Shown: positions 14,301-38,300 of the stretch, piece by piece | How positions within the stretch are numbered: the first letter of the stretch is position 1 | Layout of the letters: every line of letters begins with the position of its first letter | NCBI RefSeq assembly: GCF_023055435.1 | Contig: NW_025963791.1 | Coordinates: 21,204,001-21,268,000, forward strand | Length of the DNA: 64,000 nucleotides | Direction: 5' to 3' | Source: Haliotis rufescens | Lineage: Eukaryota | Notes under the pieces: generated by a model | The model's input: only the letters and a program-made list of their open reading frames with translations | The model's database searches: none | What the model was told of the DNA's origin: nothing | Translations under genes and position numbers: made by a program

Positions 14301-17300
14301 TCTTCTGGCACTGTCAGTGTACAAGAGCAGGAGGACTACAAGAAGGGAAAGGGTCTCTTTGCCTCACAAGGATTGCCCAATTTGTAAACCTAAATACACG
14401 TTCACATGAAATAGAATGAGACTTGCATGTTATAGTCTGATAATGATACAAAATACACAGGTGAGGCTTAATGGGGGAAACATGGTAGAGTATTTTCAAT
14501 GAAGTTTTATTCTGCAGAAACTGATTTTTATTTGTCATCAAACTTTGTAAACCCCTAATGTTTCCAAGATGATCCCCTCCAAAACTTATCGAGAACATTT
14601 TAGATTCAAATCTTCAAAAAATGGTTCCTCGCAATGCGTACACATTCATGAAATAAACATGATTTTTAACATTTTGATTTTATCATTTGCCTTGAAAAAC
14701 AGTTTGTTCTTGACCCTGTAGTATAGCATATTGTTATTGTCTTCATCATTCTTAAAATCAAAATGCCATACACAGATATAATTTGTAAAATCAAATCAAA
14801 AGAGTGAAACAGAACTTATGGCAGGTTCAATAAATACACAGAAAAAAATGAATTGACAGACAATTTAATACCCCCTCATAGTCAAACATCAGTGATCCAT
14901 GAACACAATACAGTAAATGATGAAGTTAATGCGAGCAAGAAATTAATGCAAGCACTGCTCGCATTAATAACGTGACACATTTATATGTGGACATATTGGA
15001 TTTGCCACGCCACATTCACTGCACATGCTGGGCACAATCACATTAAAAAGCTCCCATAAGTATAAAAAAAAAAATGCCAGAGAATAATCGATCTCAATTA
15101 TCTGTCGAATTGATTCGTAAAAGGCAAAAATCACAGTGTAAACAAAATGACTGGATCACTGGAAACCAGTGATGACACCAGGTGTTTGCAAAAAGGGTAA
15201 GCATGTCCTGTCCTATATGTAGCCCCTGGAAAGTGTAAACAATGTCATTGAAAGCTAATTAATTAATAAATAATGTCATCAAGAGCTTGATCGGGGTAGA
15301 GATAGGAAGTGCTACTCCCATTCATCTCATGACCAATTTTAGGCTAGGGGTTGGCACTCCCATTCATTTCATGCCCAATTTTAGGATGGGGGTTGGCACT
15401 CCCATTAATTTCATGACCAATTTTAGGCTAGGGGTTGGCACTCCCATTCATTTCATGACCAATTTTAGGCTAGGGGTTGGCACTCCCATTCATTTCATGA
15501 CCAATTTTAGGGCAGGGGTTGGCACTCCCCTTCATTTGGTTAAGCACTAATTTCATGATTTACAATTTTGCTGTGAGTTCAAACTACAACATTTTGAATC
15601 TTGTGCCAGACAGACTCGTGAAGGAAGAAAACACAAACCCACTTCTAGTTTGGTCTTTGATTCAGGCTTGTCAGTCTCATCTTGCTGTTCCTCCTCAGCA
15701 GTTGTCTCCTCTTTGTCCTCTCCTCTCTCCAGTTCTTCCTCCACATCACTGTCCTCCCGAGGCGTAGAGGTCGTTGAGGTTTTCTTGGGGGCCTCCGTCC
15801 CCTCAGTGTTGGATTCATCTGTTAACATGCAATCTACATCAGATGTTCTCCAGTTATGTCCCCTCTAAGCCTCTCTCATGACCAATGAGACTCCACCTCT
15901 CATATCATTTGCGTTTGCTTCACCCAAAATGGTTGCGCCCAGTCAGGGCGATCTGATCGATAATCAAGATCTATATTGTGATAAAAAGGGTCTTACATCG
16001 CGAAATGCATCAAATCACGTGAGCACCTTGATTAAAAACATGAAAAGATTTGGAAAATATCTGCTGACATCGAGTTGGCGGTGCACATGCTTTGCAAATC
16101 CTGCAATTGACCGAAATCTGCACGACAGTTTTGGAACCGGATTTGGATTTCTGTGCCCGATTTTGATTGGACTATGCATGGACTCGTTAGTCCAGCCAAA
16201 ATGTAACTCCATAATACCAGCCTAGTTCGACAAGGGTGGAAACTGGACTTTTATAGTCAGTTAACTCACTTGCCTCGGGAAGATGCACGTCACTATATAA
16301 GTGCAGTAATTATTGGCGCAATGATAACCCTATTTCACCTCACCCTACCCTCTAATAATCAATTTACTGTGGATTTATCCAAAAACATCACCATTGAGTC
16401 AACAACTGTACATCAAAAGAGTGGATTAAAATTATAGCTCTTGTGGTAGTGACTGCTCATACAGTTTCGCTTTTAGTCCATGTCTCTTGAAGTGAATGTC
16501 CACTATGGACGGTTTCATAACAAGTGACATCTTGACGCAAAAAGCAATTAATTCCCAAATAACAAAAATGCTGGAGTAATAAGCTGATTATCACAGCTCT
16601 AGGTTAATTACCTTTCTCTTCATCATCCATGTTGAAAGGTGTCTTCGGGTGGGCCCATGTGGAGGCATCGTTCAGATCCCATGGGAATTTCTATGTGGGT
16701 AATAGAGAAGTCAAGAGTTACCTCCCTTCTCTTAGAATTTCAATTGACATTTTCAATTGTTGTTCATAAGTTTTTGTAGCCTTGCCATAATGATTGAACT
16801 GTGCCATTGATACTGTGATACAAGTTTTTTTGTTTGTTTGTTTTTTAATGCCGCAGTCAGCAATATTCCAGCTATATGATGGTGGTCTGTAAATAATCAT
16901 GTCTGGACCAGACAATTCTGTGATTGACATCATGAGTATCGATCTACGCAATTGGGACATGATGACATGATATTTTGATGATTTTCATATCAATACATGG
17001 GCATCTAGTTCTAGTGTTGGGTGATCTTTCTTTGCACCCATATTACTAATGTAAATTGGTAAATAATTGAAACTTAGCCAGCATGTAATAATATTAAGTG
17101 CACATATAGAGCAAAAGAGGCTATAATGTAGGGCTGGGCTGGTTAGTAAATGGATACCCAGGTACCCTGGACTGTATCATTATTCCCTGACCCTGGGGTA
17201 TCTATGAACAAAGTGGGCTGTATGACTGTACATGGTTTCTAGTTTGGCCCTAGACCAGGTCTTAACAGTCAGTTTAAACCAGTCTGGTATATTCAAAACT

Positions 17301-20300
17301 TTTTGAATGAAAAACAAAGTCTAACCAACCAATATAAGTTGAAAAATATAAACCTACCATGGGGGTATTTTAACAATGGTTTAAGTGTTTGTGTCACATT
17401 TCTTCATCATTGAAATTTGCTAACAATCTGTATAGGCCTATGTAATATTTTGCTGATTGCAAAAATAATTAAATGAAACAAAGTCACACAGGTACACACA
17501 CCGAACATGTTACCTTTATCACCAATCATAATATTTTTTGGTTGGTTGAAAGATAAAACAATAAAATAAAAATGTCAACAGTGCACTTGTTCAAGAACGT
17601 TTTGACTGCAGATGCATTATTTCGTTTGTTATAATTTAGGTCACGTGACCATGGGTCGGGGTAGTTGAAACAGGACCCAGGTAGAGGATATAGGAGAACC
17701 AACCCAGGTTATCAGGACATACACCTGTCTCCCACTGCAATCATGTCCGGCAGGGAATACACCAGTGGTCTACAAACACCTGGCATTTCCAAATTGACAG
17801 TCTAAGAGGCTCAGCACTTGGAGCTTGTAGAAACGTCTCCTACCTGACCGAAGGTCCCTACGTAGTAGCCCTCCATTGTCCAGAGGCGGGCAGTCTTGTC
17901 AGTGGAGGCACTGAGGATGAAGCCCCGGCTATCGTGTTCCAGGTACTCCACACTGACCACTGCTGCATCATGGGCCTTGAATGCTGCTTCCAGGGGCGGC
18001 CGTGTCCTGACTCGCTGTGGATGGCAGGGAGACTGGTGAGGGGCGTGGATCAATGTACAGGTCGACCACAGAATTGTCACACATGCATTCAACGTGGATA
18101 AAATGTCCTCCAACATATAAATATCAAACACCAGTCAGTCTTTTCCTAACAATCTTCATCGACAATTAGATAAACCTTTGCTCAGAAATGAATGTATGTT
18201 TTAACACCATACTCAAATGTCTAGTGTATGCTTTGACACCATACTTACATGTACAGTGTATGTTTTAACACCATACTCATATGTCTAGTGTATGTTTTGA
18301 CACCATACTCACATGTCCAGTGTATGTTTTAACACCATACTCACATGTCTAGTGTATGTTTTGACACCATACTCACATGTCTAGTGTATGTTTTGACACC
18401 ATACTCACATGTCTAGTGTCTTTTTTGACACCATACTCACATGTCTAGTGTATGTTTTAACACCATACTCATATGTCCAGTGTATGTTTTGACACCATAC
18501 TCACATGTCCAGTGTATGTTTTGACACCATACTCACATGTCTAGTGTATGTTTTGACACCATACTCACATGTCTAGTGTCTTTTTTGACACCATACTCAC
18601 ATGTCTAGTGTATGTTTTAACACCATACTCACATGTCCAGTGTATGTTTTGACACCATACTCACATGTCCAGTGTATGTTTTGACACCATACTCACATGT
18701 CTAGTGTATGTTTTGACACCATACTCACATGTCTAGTGTATGTTTTAACACCAAAATCACATGTCCAGTGTATGTTTTGACACCATACTCACATGTCCAG
18801 TGTATGTTTTGACACCATACTCATATGTCTAGTGTATGTTTTAACACCATACTCACATATCCAGTGTATGTTTTGACACCATACTCACATGTCTAGTGTA
18901 TGTTTTGACACCATACTCACATGTCCAGTGTATGTTCTTACACCATACTCACATGTCAAGTGTATGTTTTGACACCATACTCACATGTCTAGTGTATGTT
19001 TTGACACCATTCTCACATGTCCAGTGTATGTTTTGACACCATTCTCACATGTCCAGTGTATGTTTTGACACCATTCTCACATGTCCAGTGTATGTTTTAA
19101 CACCATACTCACATGTCTAGTGTATGTTTTGACACCATTCTCACATGTCCAGTGTATGTTTTGACACCATGCTCACATGACCAGTGTATGTTTTGACACC
19201 ATTCTCACATGTCCAGTGTATGTTTTGACACCATTCTCACATGTCCAGTGTATGTTTTAACACCATACTCACATGTCTAGTGTATGTTTTGACACCATTC
19301 TCACATGTCCAGTGTATGTTTTGACACCATTCTCACATGTCCAGTGTATGTTTTGACACCATTCTCACATGTCTAGTGTATGTTTTGACACCATTCTCAC
19401 ATGTCCAGTGTATGTTTTAACACCATACTCACATGTCTAGTGTATGTTTTGACACCATGCTCACATGTCTAGTGTATGTTTTGACACCATGCTCACATGA
19501 CCAGTGTATGTTTTGACACCATTCTCACATGTCCAGTGTATGTTTTGACACCATTCTCACATGTCCAGTGTATGTTTTAACACCATACTCACATGTCTAG
19601 TGTATGTTTTGACACCATTCTCACATGTCCAGTGTATGTTTTGACACCATTCTCACATGTCCAGTGTATGTTTTGACACCATACGCACATTTCGAGTGTA
19701 TATTTTGTCACTGTACTCACATGTCTAGTGTCTGGCATGACACAGTACCTACAAGTGTGGGGTCTGGCTTGACACAGTACTTACATGTCTCCGGTCTGGC
19801 TTGACACAGTACTTACGTGTCTTGGGTCTGGCTTAACACAGTACTTACATGTCTCGGGTCTAGCTTGACACAGTACTTACATGTCTCGGGTCTAGCTTGA
19901 CACAATACTTACATGTCTTGGGTCTGGCTTGACACAGTACTTACATGTCTCGGGTCTGGCTTGACACAGTAGTCCGAGGTGTCCCACACCTTGATATTCC
20001 CGGCTGTATCCCCTGTAATCACGGCTGTGTTCCTTGGTTTTGAACACATGGCTAACACGGAGTCATCCACACTGTCTGTTGCACTGAAGAAACCTGGAGA
20101 AGAAGAAGAGCAGTTTCTGCTGAAGGGCCATCGCAGGTATGTCCAGTAGTGGCTGTAGCGGCCATCTTTCAAAATGGCAACCACGGCGACTAATAGTTAT
20201 CAAGCTACAACAAGTCAATCTGATGCAGATTAAATACCATTTCTCTATTCATTTGGAACAATACTTTCAGTCGACCTCAATCACACCGGGATTTTCACTG

Positions 20301-23300
20301 TAAAACGATGAAGATCAAACAAGCGAATACATAATAAACGGGACATTATTTTCTCTTTTCTTATCAAATGAAACATTTATCTCATGGAGTGATAGAGTCT
20401 CCTTTGTCAGCCGTTGTCAGCCATTGTCACAAGATGAGATAAATATGTTACATGACAGAACAGACAAATATGCTCGATATAAAGTCATCAACAGTTACTA
20501 CTGCACCTAGCTCTGATTTCGGGGTGTAGATATTCCACCAATGAAGCACCCCCCCTTCACTGGACACCACCACGGCACTCTCCGTGAACCTGATGGCAGC
20601 CCGGTCTCGCAGGAACATCACCTTGTCCACTGGAACCGGCTCACTGGACACACAAACAAGAACAGACCCAGATGTAGGGCAGTAAACATCATCGTACACT
20701 TTTACTCTGAACATCTCAACTTGTCTGCAGCGTCATGCATAGCCTTCATAAATCATTGTAAAGTAGGATGGCAAGGCTGGACTTGACAGTGCAGGAACAG
20801 GGCCGGAACAAGGGTGTCACCCTTATATGGAAGCAGATCGATTATGGGGGATGCATATTTCAGTTAAGTACAGGATGACTTTGACTCCATGACCTTCGGT
20901 AAAAGTCAATCAGCTGTAATTTGTTTGTTGTTTACTGCAGCAGTAGGCAATATTCCAACTATATGACAACAGCCTGAAAATAATGGAGTCTAGACCAGAC
21001 AAACCTATGATTAATATTATAAGCAATGATCCACACCATTGATATGCTATCAATCACATTGCTGGGCCTGACCATCCAAGCCATTCATATGCCTCATGAG
21101 ACAAGCAAAGGTTTATTTGGGCCAATTTGAACCTGGAATCCCCACAATGGCAGCTGTATTGGGAAAACAACTCTGAGCATGACATCTATTTTGTACTGAA
21201 ACAAAAATTGAGGGAACACACACAGACACACACACACAGACGCACGCACGCACACACAGAAACACNNNNNNNNNNNNNNNNNNNNNNNNNNNNNNNNNNN
21301 NNNNNNNNNNNNNNNNNNNNNNNNNNNNNNNNNNNNNNNNNNNNNNNNNNNNNNNNNNNNNNNNNNNNNNNNNNNNNNNNNNNNNNNNNNNNNNNNNNNN
21401 NNNNNNNNNNNNNNNNNNNNNNNNNNNNNNNNNNNNNNNNNNNNNNNNNNNNNNNNNNNNNNNNNNNNNNNNNATTTGTGCAAGGAGCAGCATCCCCCCT
21501 TCTAACTTCCATGTCCTTCCTACAGTTATTGATCATGTATCATCAGTAAACATGAGCTGCTTCATTTACCCTTTCTGGACTCGATGCTTTTTCTTGTGCC
21601 TAGAATTAGGTCGTTCATTTTTCAAAGAAGCTGTTAAATCTTCTATTTTCCTATTTCTGCAATGGAAATAAAAGTACATATTACAGACCTGGATGTAAGG
21701 TATCAGCACCATCACTTTCACTCTAAACATCTCAACTTGTCTGCAGCATCACGCATCACCTTCATAAATCATTTTAAAGTAGGATGGCTTGACAAAAGAA
21801 TCTCTTAGAGGATGTAAAAAAAATTCAGCAGACAAAAAACATTTATCTACAAAGGTGACAAAAAAAAGAAGAAGATTTTTCCCTGTCACTTACAAATTTG
21901 TTTGTTGTCCTTTCCGTAGTCTTATAAACATTTTTTCTGTTTCCAAATCCCATACAATAATTTCCCCATCAAATCCTGCTGTTGCAACAAAGTTCGGTGG
22001 GCAGAAGTCGATGGAGAGAATGTCATCTTTGTGGAGTTGTCCCCCTTTCCAGTCTTGGTTGGCAGTGATGTACATGTTCTGGAACACCACAAAGTACCAT
22101 TGCATGTTCATATTCTGTTCTGACAGGTTTCATGCTTGCCGTAAAAGGCGACTAGCGGGATAGGGTGGTCAGGCTCGCTGACTTGGTTGATGCATGTCAT
22201 CGATCCCAATTGCGTGGATCGATACCTAAGATGTCAATCACTGGATTTATCTGGTCCAGACTCGATTATTTACAGACCGACGTCATATAGCTGGAATATT
22301 GCTGAGTGCAGCGTAAAAGAACCAACCAACCAGCCATCTGACAGGTTTGTTTGTTATGACTTTATTACTTAGCAATATGGCAGCGGCCAGTGAATAATTG
22401 AGTCTGGACCAGACAATCCAGTGATTGATATTATGAACAACGTCCCACGCAACAGGACACGCAATAAGCCAGGTCACCAACCATGACCACCTGATCTAAG
22501 TTGCCTCTTACGAGAGTCACAGGTTGCTTGGGACCAAGCCAGAGAAGAGATGGTCATGTCATGATAATACTACCTAAAGGTGACTTACAAAGTACAGCAG
22601 AGTACAACAAAGAAATAATAGTATCGTTGGATTATAGATTTTCGGACATCATATGTTTTTGGACGGCCATGGTTATCGCGATTACTCGCGCTATAATTAG
22701 GGGTGTGGTGTCACACAGACACTGTAAATACTTAAATGATGACCTGTTTTTAAAATAAAGTCGTCTTTAAGATGTCAGTGAGATGTTTTACAGCTATTCT
22801 TGTAATTAAAAAGAAAATTACAAATGTTTCTTAAGAGTCCGAAAGTGAAAATAACTTTCTCAAGGGCTACAATGCTCCAGAGTATTTGCTAAAATACACA
22901 ATCACCATAGCACAATTAATTTTGTATTTCTTGCATACAACTATGCATTTAACATTTTAAAAACCAATAGCCATACAACTGAATGTAGCTGTTTCAGCCT
23001 GTATACACTATGTCTTTACAGATCTTTATTTACATATTGAATGCAGGTATAATGTATCCATGACCTATAGTGCAGTGAATAACGTACACAAGTACCTCTT
23101 GCTTACTGTAACTGATGGTTCTGTCCCTGTGTACTCACGTCCTGGTCTGAGTCGTCGTAGATGGTGAGCAGTCTGCTCCAACCCACTGACAGGATCATCT
23201 TCTTGTCCCGGACTGGCAGGATCCCGGTGACCTCGGCCTCTGCTGCAGCCTCCAGCTTGTGCAGGTTATGGCCATTCTGGAAGTTCCAGACCTACAACAT

Positions 23301-26300
23301 GACAAGGCAGGTGCTTGTAGGTGAGTGAGTGAGTGAGTGAGTGAGTGAGTGAGTGAGTGAGTGAGTGAGTGAGTGAGTGAGTGAGTGAGTGAGTGAGTGA
23401 GTTCCATGCCTACAACATGACAAGGCAGGTGCTTGTAGGTGATTGAGTGAGTAAGATTTGAAGCAGGATACAGTGCTGAAAGCCATGAGCATGGGTATGG
23501 TGCTAGCAAACCTAGAAACCTAATGAGTACAAACTGGGATTCGAACCCATGCTCATAAGATTCATTAATGCCTAAGGGATGCAACTCTGCATGCCCCAGG
23601 TGCATGCAGGGCTTATTTCATATCATGAGTTGAGTTTCAATCAGACAACTTGACTGTTCTTAAATTCCTGATGTCTACAAAAAGGAAAATGGAATAATGC
23701 TGTTACATACAACTGGTGGAATTTCATTAGTTGTCGTATGCATCACCCAAAATTACACTTACGTCCATAGAAATATTATATTCTATGCTATTATAGTAAT
23801 GCTATTTTTCAGGCCATTATCATTTGCAGAAGCCCGAGGTCTTCCATTAACTGCCCGACAAAGGAGTGCGGTTGAAAAGACCGAGGGCTTCTGCAAATGA
23901 TAATGCCCCGAAAAATAGCATTACCGTTATTATAGCTAAAAATGGATTGAATTTGTTATCAGATAAAAAGAAATAACAATATCGATTTTGAAATATTTAC
24001 TGTAATCAACACGAATGTCACTGACCCACTTTTACAAAAATGGAAACGTCAGAGAACAAATCAGATAACATCACTATTGAACGTGATGTCACCTATCCCT
24101 ATCCTATGACATCACCTAACAACGGGCGTGATAATGGCCCATCATCAAGCAATATGAGGGAATTATCAAGTTACAGAGGCCCGCTCATTTCTGATTAAAT
24201 GCAGGCAGTTTTATGATAATTCCATCAATTTTAGCTCTAATACTCTTTAAGTTGTTTAGGTGTGACCTTTGGAGGTTATAAGTGCCAACAAGAATAAGAT
24301 CTCTTAATCAATCTTCATTTCAAACTTCCAGCTAGATAGATGAAAAGAATTTAGATAGTTTGTCCTTATCCTCATTGCCATCGATAATATCCATTACAAG
24401 TTCTGAATCCTGAGGTTTATTTATATACTACTCTACTTTCGACAGGGATATTTACAACTTTCCATATACACAAAACTGATTCTCATATGTCAAGTATATA
24501 TTTCAATAGAATGACAACCTGATTATCCCTTTCAAACATTGAGTAGTACAGGAAGCATGTTCGTATGGTCATCATTTCAATGTGTTTGTGCAGATTACAT
24601 GTTTGATAATACATTTATCGCAGGCTTCATAAAATATACATTTCCAAAAGGTATTTTTGTCCCCAAAACTGTGATTCATAAGTTATTGTAACCTTGCCAT
24701 AATGATTGAACTGTGCTATTGATACTGTAATACAAACTATTTTCTTTTTTTTTGTTTTGTTTGTTGTTAACGCTGCACTCAGCTATATGACGGCGGTCTG
24801 TGTAAATAATCGAGTCTGGACCAGACAATCCAGTGATTGATATCATGAGCATCAATACACGCAATTGGGATCAATGACATACATCAACCAAGTCAGCGAG
24901 CCAGACCACCCGATCCTGTTAGTCACCTTTTACGTCAAGCATAGTCGCCTTTTACAGCAAGCATGGGTTGCTGAAGACCTATTCTACTCCGGATCTTCAC
25001 GGGTCGTAATACAAGTAATCTGGAACCTGACATCATGGAGGTTATATGTAGATTAGTTCAATCTCATTAAAATCAGGTCTTAGTGCATTGCAGGTCATGT
25101 CAGAATGACATTTCGGGAACCCTGACCGACCAATGAAATGACTAACAAGAAATCTACATAAGCCAACCAGAAAGCAGTTTTCTCAAGTTTTACGACACTA
25201 GTGTCAGACAGACAACAGTCAATCCAGACAATGCTTTGACAAATATTTTGAAAAGTTCTCTATTCACAACCTGAAAACTGAACAAAAGAAAATTCGTGAA
25301 TGTCTAATAGATGGCAGTACTTCTCACTGGCTATGGAAAATCTCTTCAGTTTCAAATTTGTTCCCTGCGAGACAAATGATGATTTTGACGGAATTAGACG
25401 AACAGAATTAGACTTATTAGAATGTCATTGGGAATATGCAAGTTGTTCTGTCGTGACATGTAACAGGATGTCCTGAGATCTTTGTTTAGCAGCAGCAAGA
25501 ACAAAGATCTGATTTTTATGAGATTGAGATTAGTGTTGAGGATGCGCAAGTAGCCTGTTTGCAACACCCACCTTGATGGTGCCATTCCTGGCGCCGGTCA
25601 TGAGTCTCCTGTACGTCTCATCAAAGACCATGCAGGTGATCTCCTCGTCTCCATGGGCATTGGAGAACACAATAGACTTCCTGCCACTCTCAATGTCCCA
25701 GACAGCGATACAGGACGAGTCACAGCCGGTTACGACCTGTTGGAACACATACACACTTAATCTCAACACTGAGGAATGAAGACATATTTCCAATACACTT
25801 CTACCACAAGAGTAAACGCAAACACTAAATAGATGACACAAAGGATGAGGTAGGATGAAGGCTCTTTCATAATATTTTGGCCAGATTGAAATGTCAGATG
25901 ACAAATCAGATACATGTATGTTTAAATAGCTGACCACAAGCAATTTTCCTTTCTTAAAACTAGAACACATTTTGGACTTACAGCAGAACAATATTTGTAA
26001 GAATGGCCAAACTGAGAGAAAAAGGCCTAACCATGAGTCCATGACACAAGATTATTTTTTTCACCATATATGAAAGATTATTCTGAGAAAATCAGCATCC
26101 TAAAAAAAGGCCTTTTAAGTTTTAACACATTTAATTTTTACTCATACATTTAGACAAAAGTCCAGTATATAAAGTGTTGCCATTAACAAAGAACTCATCC
26201 ATATGATCACATCTGTTAAATTTCATAACGATTTCTACAAGTTTAGATCATTTCTCAAATTATGCAGATCTTTTAGGCCAAAGGCAAGATGGGACCAAAC

Positions 26301-29300
26301 TACTATACCTGTGGCACTACTTATATACCAAACCTAGGTACCAGGTATCAGTAGACAAACATTACATGTTTCCTGATTTGCGGGTGTTATTGAGTAGTAT
26401 TTGATGCCTGGACATTCCATATGGAACTGACATTGTTAGCCAGAGGTTTCAAATGTTAAATTTCAATAAGCCACATGTAAGTGCATATGTACCTGTTTGA
26501 AGAAGTGGTTGTAAATGGCACAACACAGCTGTGTATCATGTGTGGTGGGCATTACGCTCTGTGGTGCTGCCACCTGCCCAAGCTTCAGCATGCCGATGTA
26601 GTCGTTGCTGGTAACGAGCACTGCGCTGTGTGGCGCCCCCTGCAAGTGGAGAGGGAACTGACCGTGTTCTGGCATCCGTCCGTGGATGCTGCTAGGGAAC
26701 TTGAGTTGCACCGTTTGAAGACAAGTGTGTTCTCGGATGTCCCACACCTTTATCACCTATAGGAGAAAACATGCCCTGTGTAAAGTGATGTCCAATACCG
26801 TTATCACCTATAGGAGAAAACATGCTCTGTGTAAAGTGATGTCCCATACCGTTATCACCTATAGGAGAAAACATGCCCTGTGTAAAGTGATGTCCCATAC
26901 CGTTATCACCTATAGGAGAAAACATGCCCTGTGTAAAGTGATGTCACACGCTGTTATCACCTTCAGGAGAAAACATGCCCCTTGTAAAGTGATGTCACAC
27001 ACTGTTATCACCTATAGGAGAAAACATGCCCCTCGCAAAGTGATGTCACACACTGTTATCACCTACAGGAGAAAACATGCCCTTTGTAAATTGATGTCAC
27101 ATGCTTTATCACCTATAGGAGAAAACATGCCCCTTGTAAAGTGATGTCCCATACTGTTATCACCTACAGGAGAAAACATGCCCCTTGTAAAGTGATGTTC
27201 AACACTTTTATCACCTATAGAAGAAACTTGCCACTTAAAAAGTAATGTTCCACACCTTTATCGCGTATAGAAGAAACTTGCCACTTAAAATGTGATGTTC
27301 CACACTTTTATCGCCTATAGAAGAAACTTGCCCCTTAAAAAGTAATGTTCCACATCTTTATCGCCTATAGAAGAAACTTGCCACTTAAAAAGTAATGTTC
27401 CACATCTTTATCGCCTATAGACGAAATTTGCCACTTAAAAAGTAATGTTCCACACCTTTATCGCCTATAGAAGAAACTTGCCACTTAAAAAGTGATGTTC
27501 CACACCTTTATCGCCTATAGAAGAAACTTGCCACTTAAAAAGTGATGTACCACATCTTTATCGCCTATAGAAGAAACTTGCCACTAAAAAAAAGTAATGT
27601 TCCACATCTTTATCGCCTATAGAAGAAACTTGCCCCTTAAAAAGTGATGTTCAACACCTTTATCGCCTATAGAAGAAACTTGCCCCTTAAAAAGTAATGT
27701 TCCACATCTTTATCGCCTATAGAAGAAACTTGCCACTTAAAAAGTAATGTTCCACATCTTTATCGCCTATAGACGAAATTTGCCACTTAAAAAGTAATGT
27801 TCCACACCTTTATCGCCTATAGAAGAAACTTGCCACTTAAAAAGTGATGTTCCACACCTTTATCGCCTATAGAAGAAACTTGCCACTAACAAAGTGATGT
27901 TCTACACCTTTATTGCATATAGAAGAAACTTGCCCCTTAAAAAGTGATGTTCCACATCTTTATCACCTATAGAAGAAACTTGCCCCTTAAAAAGTGATAT
28001 TCAACACCTTTATCGCCTATAGAAGAAACTAGCCACTTAAAAAGTGATGTTTCACACCTTTATCACCTATAGAAGAAACTAGCCCCTTAAAAAGTGATGT
28101 TCAACACCTTTATCGCCTATAGAAGAAACTAGCCCCTTAAAAAGTGATGTTCCACACCTTTATCACCTATAGAAGAAATTTGCCACTTAAAAAGTGATGT
28201 TCCACATCTTTATCGCCTATAGAAGAAACTTGCCACTTAAAAAGTGATGTTCCACACCTTTATCACCTATAGAAGAAATTTGCCACTTAAAAAGTAATGT
28301 TCCACACCTTTATCGCCTATAGAAGAAACTAGCCCCTTAAAAAGTGATGTTCCACATCTTTATCGCCTATAGAAGAAACTTGCCACTTAAAAAGTAATGT
28401 TCCACACCTTTATTGCATATAGAAGAAACTTGCCCCTTATAATGTGATGTTCCACATCTTTATCGCCTGTAGGAGATTTCTTATAATCATGTATATGCTT
28501 TTGCTGCTTTCATTTACTGCAGGCATTCCAGGTATCAGTGGGAGTATTCTTTTCAAGAGATTATCAGTAACCTCATTCAAGTCAACCCTAACAAAATATT
28601 ATTAGCATAGACCAAACATATCTATAAAAGAAATAGTTAATTTTATTTCAAACAATCTTATTTCATTCCAATACATTTTGCATATGTAATAAAACCCTTC
28701 AGTTATTCATTTCAGTAACAGCAGAAACAAAAACATTTACAAAAAATATGAATAAATCCTAATGCAACAGTCACTCTAAAAGCCATGCACTGCTACAAAA
28801 TAAAAATGATACGATACTTACTTGTCACCCATTGTCCCTACAACCTAGCCGTGTTCACACTACCCAAACAATGGCAGCTGTATCTGTCTTGATGCAGACA
28901 ACTCATTTAGGCCGCTCAGATATTCTAATTGCAGCATTGCAGCAGTAAGTTGTCTGACAAGACTGTTTAGATATCGGTATCAGATTTTGTCATGGTGATA
29001 CGAAATAAGAAGAGATGAACTAGACAAAACAAAGCTGATCGACAGGTGACCTTGTGACATGACCTGGGTTACGACATAAAATGACACAAAAGTTAGTCAC
29101 AATATTTGTAAGAATACACACAACCAATGGCATGTGTTTGGAATGCTATGCTATACACTATAATGAGTGAGTATGGTTTTACGCCGATTTTTGAGCAATG
29201 TTCCAGCAATATCATGGTAGGGGACACCAGAAATAGGCTTCACACATTGTACCCATTTTGGGAATCCAACCCGGGTCTTTGGCGTGACGAGCGAACGCTT

Positions 29301-32300
29301 TAACCACTAGGCTACCCTACCGCCCCCTATACACCATAAAGGCCAAGTTATGTTTCTTGCTACTGTTCGCAATTTCCTGAGAAAACTTCTTGTTGGTTTG
29401 AATCGCAAAATGACAAAGTGAAACACAGCCCCACTCTGTCACCATAACGTTAATCACATTTCTGTTTCACTTTGGAGTGATATATAATTGATAATACTTT
29501 GCATTGTAAGACCTCTTATTGGCTGGTTTACAAAATGTTTGGCTTAAAATTTAATATGGCGGTCGAAAATAAAAAAATAAGAATTTCAACTTCCAGATAA
29601 GTACTGCTGCTAATGAATGAAAAACAAACAAGTTTTAACAAGATACTGAAAGATAACTCATTGTTGTTTTTTGTGAGAATAAAGACTTCAATACGGGTAC
29701 ATATTATGCACCATTTCTTACGAACAGCTGTGATAAAATCGCATGTGTTTTTTTCAGTTCATTTTCAGTCAAAACTCATTGTGTCAAACTTGGAAGTGTC
29801 AATTTTCTGATTGTCTCAAATTCACCTTCCTGTCCCTGCAAATTCCATCTATTTTTATCATAATTAACTATCTGTCGAATTGGATGTGTGGAATTCCAAT
29901 TTGCTGGTATGCAGTTAAAAAATTGAGAAATGAGTAAAATGATAAAGATTATGTTAGTTCATGTATTCTTGAGCTACGAGTATCAGATCTTACTATACCT
30001 AAGAAGAGAATATTAACAGTGAAGACTATTGATAAGTACAAAGTAACTCCTACAGTATACAGGGGGCTATCCAAAGCTGACATTGCAAATGGGTTTGGTA
30101 TTCCAAGAAATACTTTGTTCAAATGGATAAAAAATACTGACAAAGACCTTTTTCAAATGTAAAGAATCCGTATTCTTATTACCATTCCATCTTTTTAAGC
30201 CTTTTCAAAATGGCAATATGTTTGAAGTTGTTACAACGTGATATTGAATTGTTTGTGAATACAAAAATGAATTACATATGGTTATCGACGTTGAATCGTA
30301 GTATGAAACAAAACATGACTAGATAACATGTCATAATCTCTCATAACATGATGTTTGGTTTTCGAAAATGCACATTAGTTGGTTGTCTTGAACTCTGGAT
30401 AACTCAAACTTTTTTCCAGGTCCTCGAGTTTAACACAAGAAAGTTTGACTGTAATTGTAGAACAGAGTTGGCGCCGCTCAAAGTTGTCAGAAGTAAATTC
30501 TTTCTTTGAATTTCAGGAATCTTTTTGTAAGTCGATTATGTAAACCAACTTAAAAAATAAAAGGCCTAATGGGTGACAAACATGACATTCTGTCAATGTA
30601 ACAGATTTCAAATTTGATTCAAAGAGCATAATATTATTGCCTGACAAAACATGCATATTTAATACAATTGAGAAAGGACTAAAAATATCAGGAAATATTT
30701 ATTGTCAAAAAGCACATCTTATGTTGATTAATAATGATAAAAGTGACACTTTCTCTTTTGTGAATTAAATATGCAATCTCTGGAGCCAGTTGGCAAGTAA
30801 GTATGTGGGATTTGGCCTACAGGACAGTTTTATATTAGCTGCTTGTTTCAAGGACCACAGGTTATTATTCTGCCTCTAAACCCCCAAGGACAAAAGGGTT
30901 AGTGACGCCACAGCATGCACAGAACATGGTAGACAAGTTCCCAAGAAACACATCTTAGCACATAGATGAGACAAAGATACAAATATATTAATTCCACTGA
31001 ATGGTATAGTGGTTCCATATCACGTATGACAAAATCTGAAGCATTTTTGCGCTATCATCACACTCATTAAACTATGTCAATACAAACCGCATCCTTGGAA
31101 TAGCTGAACACTTGTCGGAAACCCTCATGAATAGCAATACCGATGACGCCAGTAGCATGACCAACAAGGACTGTGATTGGTTTACTCGTGACGTACGGGT
31201 TCCACAGACGGATGTAGTGGTCGGAGCTACCAGTTGCCAGGATGTTGATGTTCTTGTTGTAGTCAAAACACTCAACACCCTACAGACACAAAAGAGCTGT
31301 ACAGGCTATTGTTGTTGGAAACCATTTGTTTTAGATATCCTACAAATCAGCAAACATTCTTTTCCTAGACATAATTAAGGCAAAATGTCCCTGACCTTAC
31401 AATAATTGACAGTGAGGTTTCCTGTTTGGGTTTTGGACAAACCAGATTTCACTGTATTTGTAATTGCTTCACATGGTTGGAGTAGAAACGTTTGTTCCAT
31501 CTGGAAGTCTCTGTGTCAGTTCTGTGAAGTATAGCAATGTGAAAGGATAGGACATCTAAATGCTCAGGCTAGTTCTGTGGATAGCAATCTTCCAGAAAAA
31601 TCATGGACGGGTACATCAGAAATCGGCTTCAAACTATGTGGGGATTCAAACCCAGGCCTTTGGCATTACGAGCTAATGCTTAAACCACCACCGGAGGTCA
31701 CCGAACAGGACACAGCATTCTATGGTATGCAAAGGGTTTCTGTGCGAGATCAGAGCATGAAAAACTTTCAGTATGAAAAGAAAAACATCAATGCCTTAGG
31801 AGTATTCATATTCATAAGACCGCCTCCGTGGTCTAGTGGTACAGCATCTGCCCGGAGAACGGAAGGACCGGGGTTTGATCCCCGGCCGCGTCATACCAAA
31901 AGACGTTAAAAGAATCTTGTACGCGACGTTAAACCCGATTTCACCTCACCTCACCTCAAATTCATAATCTGCCACAGGAAATTGAGGCCAGTGTTTCAGT
32001 GACAGTAAATTGAACATTATGAATAAGTACATACCTTATCTACTCGGAAGACATAAGACCGCTTCAGGCTCTGGACATCGGAGATGACCACTGACTTGCG
32101 GTCACTGTCGCAGGAAGAGATGATGGAGTCACTGTCTGGCAGGAAGCGGACCTGTCTGATGATCCCGGGGTGGATGTTGGACAGAACAGAGAACTGGACA
32201 TACTTGGTGTGCTGGTGCAGGTCCTACAGCAGGAGTAGGCAACAGTTGACAACTGAACATATACGAGGAACTATAATTAAGGGAACACCAAGAAGGAAAT

Positions 32301-35300
32301 GACCAGTTTCGTTGCATGAGACACAGTTACTGAATGTGGATAGCACACTGGCTCAAACTTTACACGTTGCAAATGAATAGCCTGCCATTCATGGTGACAC
32401 ATCCTGGTTACTTCCATGTGCCAATGAATGTCACAACCACATGATTCATTGACTGGGTACAAAAAAGGAAAATGCCTCCTAGAGTGTACATGACAGCAGT
32501 GTCTAATATTCCCAAGATTTCAGTCAGACAACCAGCCTGCAAAGTTACCAGACCAAATAAGATATTGCCAGTCCAGATTTTTCTAGACAAATGGACAAAA
32601 GTAACAAAAGGGTAAACATAAGAATAGTACTGTTAAATGTAAGTTCTCAGAAAATAACAATCAACTGGTGGATTGTCAACTTAGTAACTTCATCTGATTG
32701 AAATTTTATCCATCAATTATGTGTTAACGTTTACACTTAATTTACCTCTTACATTGAACTAAAACTAGAAGGCAAAATAGGTCATTTAGGGAATACAATA
32801 GTAGCCCGACCATCTTGTATGTAACTTTTCAAAACTGACCATCCGTCTACAAAATAGACCATCTCGGACTGTAGGGCAGGCGGGTATTTTAAACATTGAT
32901 GACAGAAAAAGAAAAAAATGTGCGCAATACACATGATTGAAGCTGGCCAATCACAGAATGCAGTTGTCAGACACTTAGGTAAATCTAAAAGCGTGATATC
33001 CCAAATGATGGAATGATATCGGCAAACAGGTGGTGTAGGATTAATGTGGGTAGAGGAAGGCCTTGAAAGACTCCCCAGGCAGGACTGATATAGGTGCACC
33101 AGTGTGTTGATGAACAGGTTCATTTCTGCACAAGAACTGAGGGACAACTTGAGGCCTGCCACCGGAATCCGACTTTCCAATGCTAAAAAATGGTTGAACT
33201 GAGCTTGCGTCAGAACTTTGAGTTCCAGGATGACAATGCATGTTCTCACAGAGCTCGTGTTTCAGTTGACTGTGTGAGGCAGCAAGGTGTCACACCATTA
33301 CCCCTGCCAGCCAAATCTCCAGACAGGTCACCGATTGAACACCTTTGGGATGTTCGGGGCTGAAGGGTTCGGAACCGACCTCAGTGTTACCAGAACTTGA
33401 AACAGTGTGGACAGGCCTTACAAGAAGAATGGCGACCACGGGAGACAATCCAGCATTTGATATCCAGTATGCCGAGAAGTTAACATGCCTCCATTAATGG
33501 TCATGGAGCACTGACCAGACATGGACTTTACAAGAAGATTGAATTCCACATCATTACTTTACATGTCACTTCTGAATAAGTTTTGGGGTTACCTTAAATA
33601 TTGTTCCTTGTGTATACACTTGGTGTGATGGTGCAGGTCCTATGACCTGGGTTGACCAAGTGGTTGTATATACATATCCATCTTCCTGAGGCAAGAGAAT
33701 TAACTGACTTTAAAAGACCAGTTCCGAACTAGGCTGGAATTCCTGGGCTCAATCATAGCGCCACCAATGGCTATTACATGTTATATCCCATCTAAGCCTC
33801 TCCTATGGACCAATCATATTCCACCTCCCATATCACTTGCATTTGCTTCAAACAAAATGGCGGCGCCCAGTCAAGACGATCTGATCAAAACTCAAGATCT
33901 ATATTGTGATAAAACGGGTCTTACATCGCGAAGTGCATCAAACCACTTGAGCACCTTGATTAAAAACATGAAAAGATTTGTAAAATATCTGTTGACAACA
34001 ATTTGGCGGTACATATGCTTTGCAAATCCTGCAATCGATCAAAATCTGCACGACAGTTTACTATCCGGATTTCAATTTCGATGCGCGATTTTGATTGGAC
34101 TATGCATAGACTCGTTAGGCCAGCCAAAACTCCAAAATACCAGCCTAGTTCGGCAAGGGTGGAAACTGGACTTTAATAGTCAGTTAACTCCCTTGCCTCG
34201 GGAAGATGATCCATATCAGAAGAGTGCAAACAATTTCATTTCATACAATGTTTTACTTTTACAAGTTTATTACACCTTGAAATGTGTTTACCTGCATGAA
34301 TATCTTCTGAACTCCCCCTTCACTCTGGAAGGGGGTCTCGAACAGCTGTGTGATGGGTTTGTTGAAGTAGAGGAGGTTGATGTCCCCGGAGTCCACACCG
34401 AAGGCAAGCAGGGACCGATTGTTGGGGTTCTGGGGGCATGAGTGCACATCATTATGTTGGGGCTGAACCTTCTGGCATATTGTACATGTCTCGGACAGGG
34501 AAGCAACACATTGATTAGGCCTTCTTTGGATTTGTTGGTTTACATATTTGTTTCTCCAACTGTGGGTCAGGGTTGAAATAAAATACAAATATATTAACAC
34601 CTTCACTTATGGTTTTGGTTTGTAAAGAAGTCAGGTCTGCAGAGAAAAAGAATAATGATTTTCCAACTTGCTATTATGTCGCATGTATCACTTGTCGGCC
34701 AGGCAGGGAAACAATTTTAGATTATTCTATTTTCTTAAGAGTGACTATCTGGCTTTGGGGTAATAAAAACTGAAATTTTCCCTCCACATTTCTGATTCTT
34801 AGGGTCTGCAGGTCTGTAAACCAAGATTTTTAAAAATGCCATATGTAGAATATGTAGTTATTGTTAGGCTACAAAAAAAAGTTTTTGCTTCTCTCACAAA
34901 TTTGTTTCAACATCAACAGATGTTTTTTATCCATGCGTCAGACTTTTCGTTAAAAAGAAAGAAAGAAAATCTCTTATGTTCCGTCTTAGATGAAATTCTC
35001 ATGATTGGAAAACAGGATGTTTCAAAAACCTATATCTACTGAAGAAGAAATGAATTATGTCTGATACATACAAATAATGATCCTAATCTTTTCAAAAGCC
35101 TTTTTCTCTATGATAGCCAGCTAGTTGGGATAATAAAAGGCTCAAATCAGACAATTTTGAGCTAATACGTGAAATAACTAACGAGTAGGTGTTCCTGTCT
35201 ATAAAGACATCCTACCTTCTGGTCATACCAGTAGTCAAAGCAGTAGGGTACATCAGTCATTGCTGGAACAGAGAGACATGCAGATGCAAGCTTCAGGTGA

Positions 35301-38300
35301 ACGATACTGTAGGGAAGTACTACATGTATATCAATACACTGATGTGTTGCTGGGTATGTGCAGGAAAAATCATGTCACATAACATTACGACTGTCGTAAG
35401 TCTGTGTTTAACTATGGGAGTTGCGACAGTCGCTTTGTGAAACAGGGCCAAGGTACCTCATTTCATCAACGAATAAATCATCGTTCAAATCAGACGTTTT
35501 TTGCTTGTTGTTCCTCCCAGTACAGGTGCGGGTCGTTCAAGTACACGAGCATGATATTCCAACAAATACACTACACTACTGATAGTGACAATCGATGAAA
35601 TTATAACTAATAAAGTATGGTACGCTCACTTCTGACACTGCTGTCTGTATAGTTTCAGCTGTAACATGTAAAGGCATAGACCCGTGTAGATCCAGGGTAG
35701 CATAGGTCTTCTGAAAATCATGCTTGCGTAAAAGGTGACTATGCTTGTCGTAAGAGGCGACTAACGGGATCGGGTGATCAGGCTCACTGACTTTGTTGAT
35801 GCATGTCATAATATCCTATTATATAAATCGATGCTCAAGATGTCAGTCACTGGTTTGTCTGATCCAGACTTGATTATTTACAGTCCGCCTGGAATATTGC
35901 TGAGTGCGGCGTTAAAAAACAAACAAATAAACAAAATATAGGCATAAATTTGTTACCAGTACCTACCAAACAAATGGAATTCTTCAAAATACTGGGTGGT
36001 GGAAACATCATAGAAGCGGATGTCTCGACTGGTAGATCCGATGGCAATCTTATGACAGTTGGGCATGTAGACGACATCTGTGATCCACATCTTGAAGCGA
36101 CGCTTCTGACCTATTGTCTCTGTGGTGTCGTCCTCGATGACATAATTCCTCTCATACGAAATGTTGGAGTTCCACACACTCATACCCCCTTCCTGCAGAA
36201 CAGGAAGTATACAACCTTACAGTGGGATCGGGTGTGCTTGGGGCCAGCGTTAATTTGCTGAGCAGAGTTGCATCCCTTAGGGGTGCCAGGAACCTATGAT
36301 AATAGGTTCGAATCCCAGATTCACTCTAGGTTTGTCAGTACCAATTATATTCGGCCTTGGTGTAAACCTGCATTATATCTGGCCTTCCTCCTAAATTTAG
36401 CTAACAAGGCGTTAGAAATTGGCACTTGTCCTATAGTCCTTGCCAATTGCCCAATCGTTAAGGTATCATCAAGACTAGTTGAAATTAGCCATTTTAAGGG
36501 ATTTGCTACATGTTATCATTAGTGAACATATTAAAACATGTTACTTTCTATCACTGTAGCACGCTGTGACATAACTGAAATACTGTCCAAATCACATAAA
36601 ACTCAACTCATTCATTCACTGTTCAAAACAGTGTTAAACTTCACTCTCTCTCACTCACTCGAGATCACTGCAGTGGTGTCAAGTCAAAAGATGACATGAG
36701 GTAAAAGTATTTTGTGCAGAATTTTTGCTCAGTGTACATTACCAGCATGATCAGGCAAATCAGGGACTCATTTCACTGATTTCAAAGTAATTACCTTCTA
36801 TTTTATACATTCCAACAGATATTTAATGGTTATTTGCCAGACAGAGTTCACAGAGCACAAGTAGGCAGGACCAAGATAATGAAAGGTCGGTTATTGAAAA
36901 AACATGATGCCATGAATCAGGTTCAACTTATGTGCAAAGAATGACAACAAAAATATTCATTATAAAACATCAACACCAGACAACAATCAGACTCTATTGT
37001 CTGCGATTACACCTACCTTACTTATTGTTAAATATCGGGTAGGGTTTTCAACAGATATGATCTTGGTAGTAGTTTCTTGCTGCAAATAAAGATATCTTGT
37101 GATAATACGACAAAATATATAACACTGGAATTAAATGTACCTCATATTGACTACAATAAAGTACATCCTGGATTGTCCAAGAGAAGTTCTACACCAGCTG
37201 ACTGATCAGACATAGAGGATATTATACTCGTGTTCATGACCATGTTTACGACACTCGTATCATAATGGGGAATCATAATGGATTTGGTGATCAGGCTTCA
37301 GTGACTTGTGTCAAAATATGTCCCCAGTATGTCCCCAGCAACCTAAGCTTGTCATAAGGTGAGGTGAGGTGAGGTGAAATTGGGTTTAACGTCGCGTCAA
37401 AGATTATTGCACTTATATAGCAACGTGCATGCACGTGTGTGTGTGTGTGGCTGCTTGTACTAGTCCGGACTGATGCCGATTTATAGTGCTAGCACACTGA
37501 GATACCATGCCGCATTTTAACATGAATACCCCACTCAGACACAGTATACAGACTCCGAGCCGACCAGTCCTTGTTTTAGCCCCTTAATGCCAAGCGCCAG
37601 ACAGGGTAACAACAAGTACCATCTTTTAACGTCTTTAGGGATTGAACCCCAGACCTTCCGCTCTCCGGGCAGACGCTCTACCACTAGACCACGGAGGCGG
37701 TCCTTGTCATAAGGGGAATCATGATGGACTTGTTGGTCAGGCTCGGTGACTTGGTTTAATGCATGTCATCGTGAATTGTCTGGCCCAGATATCATCATTT
37801 ACAGGCCACCATCATATAACTGGAATACTGCTGAGTGTGGTATGAAATAACAAACAAACCAACGTTCCATGTTCTCACCCTGTTGTGTACGGCATGTCTG
37901 ATCTTGGGCTCCACAAGGAAGGGGATTTCCTTCTTGGTGCGGAGGTAGTCGTTCTCCCGGTACAGCAGCAGGAGATAAGTGCAGAACTCATCCCAGTCCA
38001 CGTACCCGTCACACGACGTGTCGAGCTAAACACAAAAAACATGGCAACTACAACATCCATTGAGGATCATATATTATGGTAACACATACTGTCAAATGAC
38101 GTGTCAAGCTGAACACAAAATACATGGCATCCATTGAGGATCCTATACTGTGGTAACTTGTAGGGGTGTTTATTGAAGGCAACCATTGCAATTGTGGTAC
38201 AACCACTGTTATATACTCTCCACTTTTGACAGGGATATATTTATCTTTCCATGGTAAATAAAACAGATTCTCATATGTCAAGTGTATGATTAAACATCAT

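What the first reader, a model, noticed from the sequence alone, without database searches (positions are those of the whole stretch)
18193..38157. Gene-wide pattern: the gene's own splice junctions are repeatedly duplicated or amplified into its introns
Seen: six of 21 introns contain copies of their own junction region. The exon-16 donor has about 55 copies, the exon-10 acceptor about 34, and the exon-3, exon-8 and exon-12 acceptors one extra each; the intron ends before exons 14 and 15 are homologous. The copies lie on the intron side and the reading frame stays intact. Inference: so many junction-anchored events in one gene suggest either a mutational process targeted to splice junctions (transcription/splicing-coupled breaks or R-loops repaired by slippage) or retained decoy splice-site arrays. 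Either would be a route to intron expansion and satellite birth. Loose analogy only: Drosophila Y-linked spermatogenesis genes have satellite-filled giant introns.
Basis: partly seen in the sequence, partly recalled or inferred. Interest (0 to 1): 0.85.

Follow-up and report, generated by a model that had tools for sequence, protein, structure and literature searches.

The report
Splice-junction minisatellites ("mirages") in CFAP337
In a mollusc sperm-flagellum gene, several introns hold tandem copies of their own exon boundary; the copies are real and are spliced out, but this kind of repeat is already known from amphioxus ("mirages") and some human genes, and other genes of this repeat-rich genome have it too.

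Summary
The minus-strand gene is a CFAP337/WDY-like EF-hand + WD40 gene with at least 20 mapped exons.

- **Exon 16 donor:** the last 26 nt of exon 16 plus GTAAGT are repeated about 55 times in exact 32-nt register (19970-18210).
- **Exon 10 acceptor:** the last 29-30 nt of intron 9 plus the first 21 nt of exon 10 are repeated 34 times (28466-26757).
- **Smaller events:** single extra acceptor copies lie upstream of exons 3, 8 and 12. The last ~135 nt of introns 13 and 14 are homologous up to the AG.
- **Assembly gap:** it lies inside intron 14, and exons 14 and 15 join in frame.
- **Splicing:** RNA contigs of two related organisms splice at the exon-proximal acceptors of exons 10 and 12.

It is not specific to this gene. 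I verified the same structure in TyrRS, annexin and zinc-finger exons elsewhere in the genome. In a random 200-kb sample, 16% of bases are tandem repeats.

This scan had already found the phenomenon on other DNA of this genome (s1-807618) and linked it to amphioxus "mirages". Human F7, CBS and IFI6 carry donor-spanning minisatellites of the same kind.

Decoy GT/AG dinucleotides are not preferentially conserved, and using a decoy gives a premature stop. That argues for tolerated by-products rather than functional decoys.

Junction events exceed a uniform-origin null in this gene (5-6 of 8; P about 1e-5 to 2e-4 before correcting for choice of gene). A junction-biased origin is therefore neither shown nor excluded.

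The parts
11019..39553 (-). CFAP337 / WDY-like gene (EF-hand + WD40), exons 2-21 as mapped. E2 ~39553-39307; E3 38025-37879; E4 37079-37017; E5 36192-35967; E6 35262-35216; E7 34429-34292; E8 32223-32035; E9 31279-31088; E10 26756-26493; E11 25736-25572; E12 23291-23139; E13 22078-21894; E14 21656-21570; E15 20643-20507; E16 20093-19945; E17 18014-17844; E18 16690-16612; E19 15818-~15639; E20 12231-12085; E21 11303-11022 plus stop. Exon 1 and a possible exon between E19 and E20 were not found.
   Evidence: tblastn with P0004; splice sites; Pfam EF-hand and WD40 on single exons; source names of the homologs; RNA contigs join E10-E11-E12-E13.
18210..19970 (-). Exon 16 donor array. Fifty-five 32-nt units in exact register. 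Unit 1 (19970-19939) is the real exon end plus donor. Units 2-8 are 88-97% identical to it. Units 9-55 form a diverged family, 62-75% identical to unit 1 and about 94% to each other, with a weak 5-unit (160-nt) higher-order period.
   Evidence: Unique to this locus.
26757..28466 (-). Exon 10 acceptor array. Thirty-four units: 9 exon-proximal units, eight of 51 nt and one of 50 nt, and 25 distal units of 50 nt (one of 52). Each unit holds about 21 nt of exon start plus the intron end with polypyrimidine tract and AG. The two families each differ from the exon's 21 nt at two positions, and the positions are different. Each decoy reads into its own TAG as an in-frame stop.
   Evidence: Unique to this locus. 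Units are at raised depth in DNA runs of organisms A and B.
38086..38157 (-). Single decoy copy of the exon 3 acceptor (intron end plus about 22 nt of exon start). The real copy is 38083-38003.
23400..23452 (-). Single decoy copy of the exon 12 acceptor (43 nt of intron end plus 10 nt of exon start, 94% identical). It is separated from the real copy (23334-23282) by the (TCAC)n run at 23321-23402.
   Evidence: RNA contigs use the real acceptor.
33618..33643 (-). Short (26-30 nt) copy of the AG plus the start of exon 8, 1.4 kb upstream of the real acceptor (32227-32202). There is no homology beyond it.
21657..21789 (-). End of intron 13, homologous to the end of intron 14 (20644-20773). The first 76 nt are 91% identical, the rest about 65%, and the homology stops at the acceptor AG. 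It is found only at these two places in the genome.
21266..21473 (.). Assembly gap (N), inside intron 14 and next to an (AC)n run at 21216-21258. It interrupts no exon of the model.
12666..12955 (.). 32-nt x 9 array inside the E19-E20 intron, not at a mapped junction. Used as a control event.
15314..15537 (.). 42-nt x 5.3 array about 100 nt downstream of exon 19, not spanning a mapped junction. Used as a control event.

Best explanation
These are 'mirage'-type repeats: tandem duplications whose unit happens to span an exon-intron boundary.

Shown:
- The units contain real exon sequence plus the adjacent splice signal.
- They are locus-specific.
- They sit wholly on the intron side of the site that is used.
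- At exons 10 and 12 the exon-proximal acceptor is the one spliced.
- The genome is saturated with minisatellites.

Inferred:
- The same untargeted slippage and unequal-exchange process that fills this genome's introns with minisatellites sometimes duplicates a 30-110-nt piece across a junction.
- Such a duplication is tolerated because the spliceosome keeps using the outermost site, that is the most upstream donor and the acceptor next to the real exon. The extra copies leave with the intron, and occasional decoy use gives a premature stop.
- Once two copies exist, unequal exchange expands them, here in at least two rounds, which gives an older diverged family and a younger exon-like family.
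- The exon-side unit is held by selection. It can neither decay nor be deleted, so it can re-seed the array.
- The arrays have no function of their own. Their effect is intron growth and raw material for new splice sites.
For: - Units span the junctions.
- The copies exist only at this locus.
- Breakpoints sit at no fixed offset from the junction. The exon part is 26, 21, ~22, 10 and ~27 nt here, and 33, ~58, ~15 and ~19 nt in other genes, as expected for random duplications.
- RNA contigs of organisms A and B join E10-E11-E12-E13 at the authentic sites.
- Decoy GT and AG are not better conserved than other unit positions: 4 of 46 units versus a mean of 2.1, and 3 of 24 versus a mean of 1.2.
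- Decoy use gives in-frame stops.
- In an unbiased 200-kb sample, 16% of bases are tandem repeats and there is one array per ~5 kb. Arrays there start at +3, +27 and +70 nt from donors and end 16-44 nt before an acceptor.
- The same structure occurs in TyrRS, annexin and C2H2 zinc-finger exons and in one exon without a Pfam match.
- Published precedents report normal splicing and concerted evolution: PMC3087553, PMC3902484 and PMC1557585.
Against: - In this gene junction events are about 7-8 times more frequent than a uniform-origin null predicts.
- All four small non-transposon local duplications in the gene sit at acceptors.
- Splice-like motifs are about 2-fold over-represented in periodic arrays after normalising to background.
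- Two of the four donor-motif arrays whose flank could be read turned out to be real junction arrays, more than my rough expectation of 0.2-0.9 per 6.8 Mb.
- Use of the first donor of exon 16 rests on the reading frame and homology only, not on RNA.
- Copy numbers were not checked with long reads.
Confidence: 0.55

Rival explanations
1. Junction-biased origin. DNA at splice junctions is intrinsically more prone to tandem duplication in the germline. Possible causes are breaks in the nucleosome-poor polypyrimidine tract next to the exon nucleosome, or transcription- and splicing-coupled R-loops. Under this view mirages arise several times more often than elsewhere in introns.
For: - 5-6 of 8 local events in this gene are at junctions against 0.75 expected.
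- All 4 small duplications are at acceptors.
- The normalised excess of GTAAGT, AGGTRAGT and TTTCAGG in periodic arrays is about 1.8-2.3-fold.
- Two of four readable strong-donor arrays are true exon junctions.
- The amphioxus literature calls the mechanism unclear and the phenomenon recurrent.
Against: - The gene was picked after the fact from about 800 scanned windows. After correcting for roughly 2000 genes, the P values become about 0.02 to 0.5.
- Breakpoints have no fixed relation to the junction.
- The pattern counts are per match and are dominated by a few large arrays, and the background ratios rest on 10-217 counts.
- In the random sample only 1 of 39 arrays touches a verified junction.
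- Protection of the exon-side unit from deletion could by itself give up to about a 2-fold excess.
Confidence: 0.3
2. Selected decoy arrays. The repeated splice sites are kept because they bind U1 or U2AF and tune splicing, recursive splicing or expression of this testis/cilia gene.
For: Most decoys keep intact GT or AG and good consensus. Each exon 10 unit reads AG|GT, which resembles a recursive splice point.
Against: - GT and AG positions vary at or above the unit average.
- High unit identity is explained by recent amplification.
- The same arrays occur in unrelated housekeeping genes.
- Decoy use gives premature stops.
- The main RNA contigs show only the authentic sites.
Confidence: 0.1
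3. Assembly artefact. The arrays or their copy numbers were produced by mis-assembly of repeats.
For: A gap lies nearby, and short-read contigs cannot give copy number. In amphioxus a mirage was mis-assembled in the draft genome.
Against: - Array 2 units and the exon/array boundary are present in DNA runs of several studies and of a second organism, at raised depth.
- The arrays show an ordered internal structure with two families and a hybrid unit.
- The single-copy decoys lie in unique sequence.
Confidence: 0.05

Closest known systems
[quoted passage not shown] 2002, cited in PMC3087553 and PMC3902484)
   Same: The unit spans an exon-intron boundary. Both 5' and 3' boundaries can be affected. 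Units are 10-160 nt. Regular splicing is kept. There is concerted evolution inside the cluster, with the boundary unit set apart. Several can occur in one gene.
   Different: The host here is a mollusc rather than a cephalochordate. Copy numbers are much higher (34 and 55, against 2-6 in the globins). Length or somatic instability was not tested here. The surrounding genome is 16% tandem repeat in my sample.
Human minisatellites whose first monomer spans an exon-intron boundary: F7 IVS7 (37 nt x 5-9), IFI6 (6-16) intron 2 (25 pseudo-sites), CBS IVS13, LMNB2, PDGF intron 4 (PMC1557585)
   Same: [quoted passage not shown] The most upstream site is the one used. [quoted passage not shown]
   Different: The human cases described are donor arrays only, one per gene. 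Here acceptor arrays and single acceptor decoys dominate. First-donor use at exon 16 is inferred from the reading frame and not from RNA.
Intron gain or exon birth by internal tandem duplication containing AG|GT (Rogers' model, as discussed in PMC3087553)
   Same: Duplicated junction pieces provide spare splice sites. The homologous ends of introns 13 and 14 show an acceptor region present twice.
   Different: No new intron or exon is shown to have arisen here. Exon 14 is also present in the scallop homolog, so it is old.
Satellite-filled giant introns of Drosophila Y-linked fertility genes (including WDY, the fly counterpart by name)
   Same: The gene family is the same (WDY/CFAP337-like by the sources' names), and introns hold tandem repeats.
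   Different: Introns here are 0.2-4.3 kb, not megabases. The repeats are locus-specific minisatellites derived from the gene's own junctions, not simple satellites.

Membership tests
Mirage minisatellites (junction-spanning tandem duplications) | The repeat unit contains both exon and intron sequence of one boundary, in tandem with the real boundary | tested here: met
   Exon 16 donor and exon 10 acceptor arrays; exon 3 and exon 12 two-copy duplications. The exon 8 copy is dispersed by 1.4 kb and the intron 13/14 homology holds no exon bases, so those two are relatives rather than strict members.
Mirage minisatellites (junction-spanning tandem duplications) | Regular splicing is kept: the authentic, outermost site is used | tested here: met
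   RNA contigs X17 (organism A) and X16 (organism B) join 26757-26491 | 25734-25570 | 23289-23139 | 22078-21894. This was tested for exons 10 and 12 only. For exons 3, 8 and 16 only the frame and homology argue for it.
Mirage minisatellites (junction-spanning tandem duplications) | Concerted evolution within the cluster, with the boundary unit excluded from homogenisation | tested here: met
   Two homogenised families per array. The distal units are about 92-94% identical to each other but 62-75% to the exon unit, and a hybrid unit sits at the family border.
Mirage minisatellites (junction-spanning tandem duplications) | Length instability or polymorphism between haplotypes | not testable with these tools
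Copy number per individual is unknown.
F7-type donor-spanning VNTR | Only the most upstream of the reiterated 5' splice sites is used | tested here: inconclusive
   Only donor 1 keeps the frame and matches P0004. Reading on past donor 1 in frame meets a TAA within the second unit, so use of a later donor retains intron sequence that holds a premature stop.
CFAP337 / WDY-like protein | EF-hand N-terminal part followed by WD40 propellers, colinear with named homologs | tested here: met
   tblastn with the 1202-aa scallop protein is colinear over 20 exons at 30-87% identity. Pfam finds EF-hand and WD40 on single exons. The names come from the sources.
Satellite-filled giant introns (Drosophila Y genes) | Introns of hundreds of kb to Mb filled with simple satellite shared with other loci | tested here: not met
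   The largest intron is 4.3 kb, and the array units are unique to this locus.
Recursive-splicing ratchet points | An intronic AG|GT site used as an intermediate, leaving no trace in the mRNA | not tested
   Exon 10 units read AG|GTGATA, which is a weak donor at +5. No lariat or intermediate data were available.

The most novel reading that the evidence does not exclude
In this mollusc, splice junctions, and acceptors in particular, are true hot spots for tandem duplication. Junction-spanning minisatellites would then arise several-fold more often than elsewhere in introns. With thousands of such arrays, this genome would be the first in which the unexplained origin of 'mirages' can be tested statistically, and a splicing- or chromatin-linked germline instability could be mapped to the nucleotide.
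Probability: 0.3. Interest if true: 0.75.

Novelty: new member of a known kind. Interest (0 to 1): 0.42.

Why it matters
The gene is a clean, RNA-supported example of how introns can grow from their own boundaries. Two introns owe 40% and 90% of their length to junction copies.

It also shows how the spliceosome ignores dozens of consensus decoys placed next to the real site.

The phenomenon is known from amphioxus and from a few human genes, but its mechanism is still called unclear in the literature. A mollusc genome in which about one base in six is tandem repeat, and in which such arrays turn up in many genes, gives enough cases to test whether junctions are mutational hot spots. The same cases would show how often decoys become new exons or introns.

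For annotation it is a practical warning. Gene predictors can pick a decoy site, and assemblers can collapse these arrays.

Tried and rejected
- **Dispersed repeat or transposon origin:** rejected. Both array units and the 76-nt homology occur only at this locus.
- **Other window arrays as junction arrays:** the arrays at 7896, 10612, 12666, 15314, 45075, 50518 and 52327 have no exon at their edges that I could see. Homologs found no further exons there.
- **Hexamer enrichment in 39 random arrays:** GTAAGT was seen 3 times against 1.2 expected and GTGAGT 5 against 2.7. The sample is too small to decide.
- **Whole-genome periodic pattern counts:** GTAAGT gave 56,183 against 71,382 for the reversed control, AGGTRAGT 8,982 against 7,321, and TTTCAGG 6,311 against 2,147. 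After normalising to background the excess is about 2-fold. The counts are per match and dominated by large arrays, so this is suggestive only.
- **Reads on intron 16:** I followed the tool's advice and laid a part with fewer copies instead.
- **The original 2002 mirage paper (PMC117041):** not held.
- I redid it by coordinates.
- **Pfam call:** one call failed on a wrong frame.
- **Higher-order periodicity:** weak in array 1 (identity 0.956 at lag 5 against about 0.94) and not clear in array 2.


Full report
**What is there.** The window carries a minus-strand gene for an EF-hand plus WD40 protein. Single-exon Pfam searches give EF-hand and WD40 matches. A search with exon 10 alone returned full-length relatives. 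Their sources name them cilia- and flagella-associated protein 337-like or WD repeat-containing protein on Y chromosome-like, from scallops, a limpet, a crinoid and a flatworm. tblastn of the 1202-aa scallop protein P0004 against the window is colinear over 20 exons, from about 39553 down to the stop at 11019-11021. I fixed the splice sites by inspection. Exon 1 and a possible exon between exons 19 and 20 were not found.

**The gap.** The N run 21266-21473 lies in intron 14, beside an (AC)n run. Exon 14 (21656-21570) ends in phase 2 and exon 15 (20643-20507) completes the codon. P0004 residues 807 and 808 are contiguous across the two exons. RNA depth in the bin that holds exon 14 equals what one 87-nt exon would give at the contig's depth. 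The gap therefore interrupts no exon of the model.

**The six events.**
- **Exon 16 donor.** Exon 16 ends at 19945. The 32 nt at 19970-19939, which are 26 exon nt plus GTAAGT, are followed by 54 more units with no indel down to about 18210.
  - Units 2-8 are 88-97% identical to the real unit. Units 9-55 form a second family, 62-75% identical to the real unit and about 94% to each other.
  - A hybrid unit sits at the border between the families, and there is a weak 5-unit period.
- **Exon 10 acceptor.** Exon 10 starts at 26756, with 34 units lying upstream of it.
  - Nine units are proximal, eight of 51 nt and one of 50 nt. Twenty-five are distal, of 50 nt with one of 52.
  - Each unit holds about 21 nt of exon start followed by the intron end with its AG.
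  - Each family differs from the exon's 21 nt at two positions, and the positions are different. Neither family therefore descends from the other's present form, which fits at least two rounds of amplification from the boundary.
- **Exons 3 and 12.** Each has one extra acceptor copy just upstream. At exon 12 the two copies flank a (TCAC)n run.
- **Exon 8.** A 26-30-nt copy of the AG plus the exon start lies 1.4 kb upstream, with no homology beyond it.
- **Introns 13 and 14.** Their last ~135 nt are homologous, and the homology stops at the AG.
- **Locus specificity.** Both array units and the 76-nt segment occur nowhere else in the 1.33-Gb assembly.

**Splicing.** One RNA contig from organism A (X17) and one from organism B (X16) each lie on 26757-26491, 25734-25570, 23289-23139 and 22078-21894 as adjacent pieces of the record. 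These are exons 10 to 13 joined at the authentic sites, give or take the 1-2 nt that fit both sides. The exon-proximal acceptors of exons 10 and 12 are therefore the ones used, in two related organisms.

A decoy acceptor of exon 10 would read in frame into its own TAG. Reading on past the first donor of exon 16 in frame meets a TAA within the second unit. DNA runs of several studies and of organism B hold the exon 10 boundary and the array units at raised depth. Copy numbers remain unchecked.

**Not a property of this gene.** Earlier notes of this scan list similar arrays in other genes of the same genome. I checked some of them myself.
- **TyrRS.** The last 33 nt of a TyrRS exon plus 26 intron nt are repeated about 40 times (L011; Pfam tRNA-synt_1b).
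- **Annexin.** An annexin acceptor plus about 58 exon nt is repeated 19 times (L012).
- **Donor-motif arrays.** I looked at five arrays found by a strong-donor pattern on another contig.
  - Two start in real exon ends. One is a C2H2 zinc-finger exon with 54 units (Pfam E 1.5e-16). The other is an open frame with good splice sites but no Pfam match.
  - Two have no exon beside them, and one ran off the locus.

**How repeat-rich the genome is.** I took twenty 10-kb stretches at fixed 2.2-Mb steps along the window's contig. In them, 16.1% of bases are tandem repeats, and there are 39 arrays of period 10 or more and length 90 or more, which is one per ~5 kb.

One random stretch holds a gene with FN3 and DB-module exons whose introns are packed with arrays. 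One array starts at +3 of a donor, one starts 70 nt after a donor, and one ends 16-44 nt before an acceptor. In another stretch an array starts 27 nt after an FN3 exon's donor. With this density, thousands of junction-spanning arrays are expected genome-wide without any targeting.

**Is there more than chance?** Within this gene I counted 8 local duplication events: 4 arrays and 4 small non-transposon duplications. Placing them at random on the pre-expansion gene gives 0.75 junction hits. Observed are 5 spanning events plus 1 abutting, with P = 2.4e-4 and 1e-5. For the two large arrays alone P = 0.027.

The gene was chosen after the fact from about 800 scanned windows. With roughly 2000 genes looked at, these values become about 0.02 to 0.5.

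Whole-genome counts of periodic triples of splice motifs against the reversed motif give the following:

| Motif | Ratio in periodic arrays | Ratio in non-array sequence |
|---|---|---|
| GTAAGT | 0.79 | 0.44 |
| AGGTRAGT | 1.23 | 0.53 |
| TTTCAGG | 2.94 | 1.41 |

That is about a 2-fold normalised excess each time. However, the counts are per match, a few large arrays dominate them, and the backgrounds are small.

Two of the four donor-motif arrays whose flank could be read were true junctions. My rough expectation was 0.2-0.9 such arrays in that 6.8 Mb. This points the same way but rests on assumed donor densities. A modest junction bias is therefore possible but not shown. An exon-anchored array also cannot be wholly deleted or decay at its anchored end, which alone could give up to about a 2-fold excess (inference).

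**Function of the decoys.** In the distal family of array 1 the G of GT is changed in 4 of 46 units, against a mean of 2.1 per position. In the distal family of array 2 the G of AG is changed in 3 of 24 units, against a mean of 1.2. The splice dinucleotides are thus no better kept than the rest of the unit. The exon share of the unit varies from 10 to about 58 nt among the cases I read, so the breakpoints have no fixed relation to the junction. Both points fit random duplications that are tolerated, not a precise mechanism or a selected decoy.

**What is known.** An earlier follow-up of this scan (s1-807618) tied such arrays in this genome to the 'mirages' of amphioxus. I checked the literature.
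[quoted passage not shown] It cites Adh3 and other loci, notes normal splicing and concerted evolution with the boundary units set apart, and calls the mechanism unclear.
- **PMC3902484** adds troponin C and PGBD5.
- **PMC1557585** lists human genes whose minisatellite's first monomer spans the exon-intron boundary (F7, IFI6, CBS, LMNB2, PDGF). It shows for F7 that only the most upstream donor is used.
- I found no paper on this in molluscs, but the search was limited.

That earlier follow-up called the organism 'abalone-like'. I can only say it is a mollusc, on the strength of its closest protein relatives.

**Verdict.** Intron growth from junction copies is real, but the pattern is genome-wide and of a described kind. 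Selected decoys are unlikely. A junction-targeted process remains an open, testable possibility.

Noticed in passing
window 22132-22436 and 24756-25005 (also 16763-16957, 35679-35935, 40045-40460): Copies of a very abundant interspersed element, some in inverted pairs inside introns 11 and 12. Read depth there is 10^5 to 10^6 times that of the flanks. The element carries an internal 22-nt x 2 repeat, which TRF lists at 3359, 24920, 35720 and 42390.
   Followed up: partly
window 7896-9318, 45075-46364, 50518-50870, 52327-53594: Four further large minisatellites outside the mapped exons (143 nt x 10, 24 nt x 54, 26 nt x 13.6, 20/41 nt x 62). Three of them have donor-like GTGAGA, GTAAGG or GTGAAT on the minus strand, but I could find no exon beside them.
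   Followed up: partly
L011:1748-3659 (G000:C13:26651748-26653659): A 15-nt x 128 array ends about 40 nt before the acceptor of the same TyrRS exon whose donor is amplified about 40 times. That exon is therefore flanked by arrays on both sides.
   Followed up: no
L030 (G000:C13:37400001-37410000): A randomly drawn 10-kb stretch of an FN3/DB-module gene has 7 arrays covering about 36% of it. The arrays reach to within 0-70 nt of three exon boundaries.
   Followed up: partly
G000:C1:759572-761864: A satellite of more than 2 kb made of short GTAAGT-containing units dominates the whole-genome count for the donor hexamer pattern. It shows why per-match counts are unreliable.
   Followed up: no
window 26761: Organism B (DNA run X12 and RNA run X16) lacks 2 nt in the polypyrimidine tract of the authentic exon 10 acceptor, yet it splices at the same site.
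   Followed up: no
window 21894-21656 (intron 13) and P0004 residues 746-778 and 1030-1067: The scallop homolog has about 33 and 38 residues with no counterpart found in the window. Intron 13 is only about 240 nt, and more than half of it is the segment homologous to the end of intron 14.
   Followed up: partly
window 50010-50107: A two-copy 61-nt tandem duplication (86% identical) lies outside the gene. It is an example of a non-junction local duplication.
   Followed up: no
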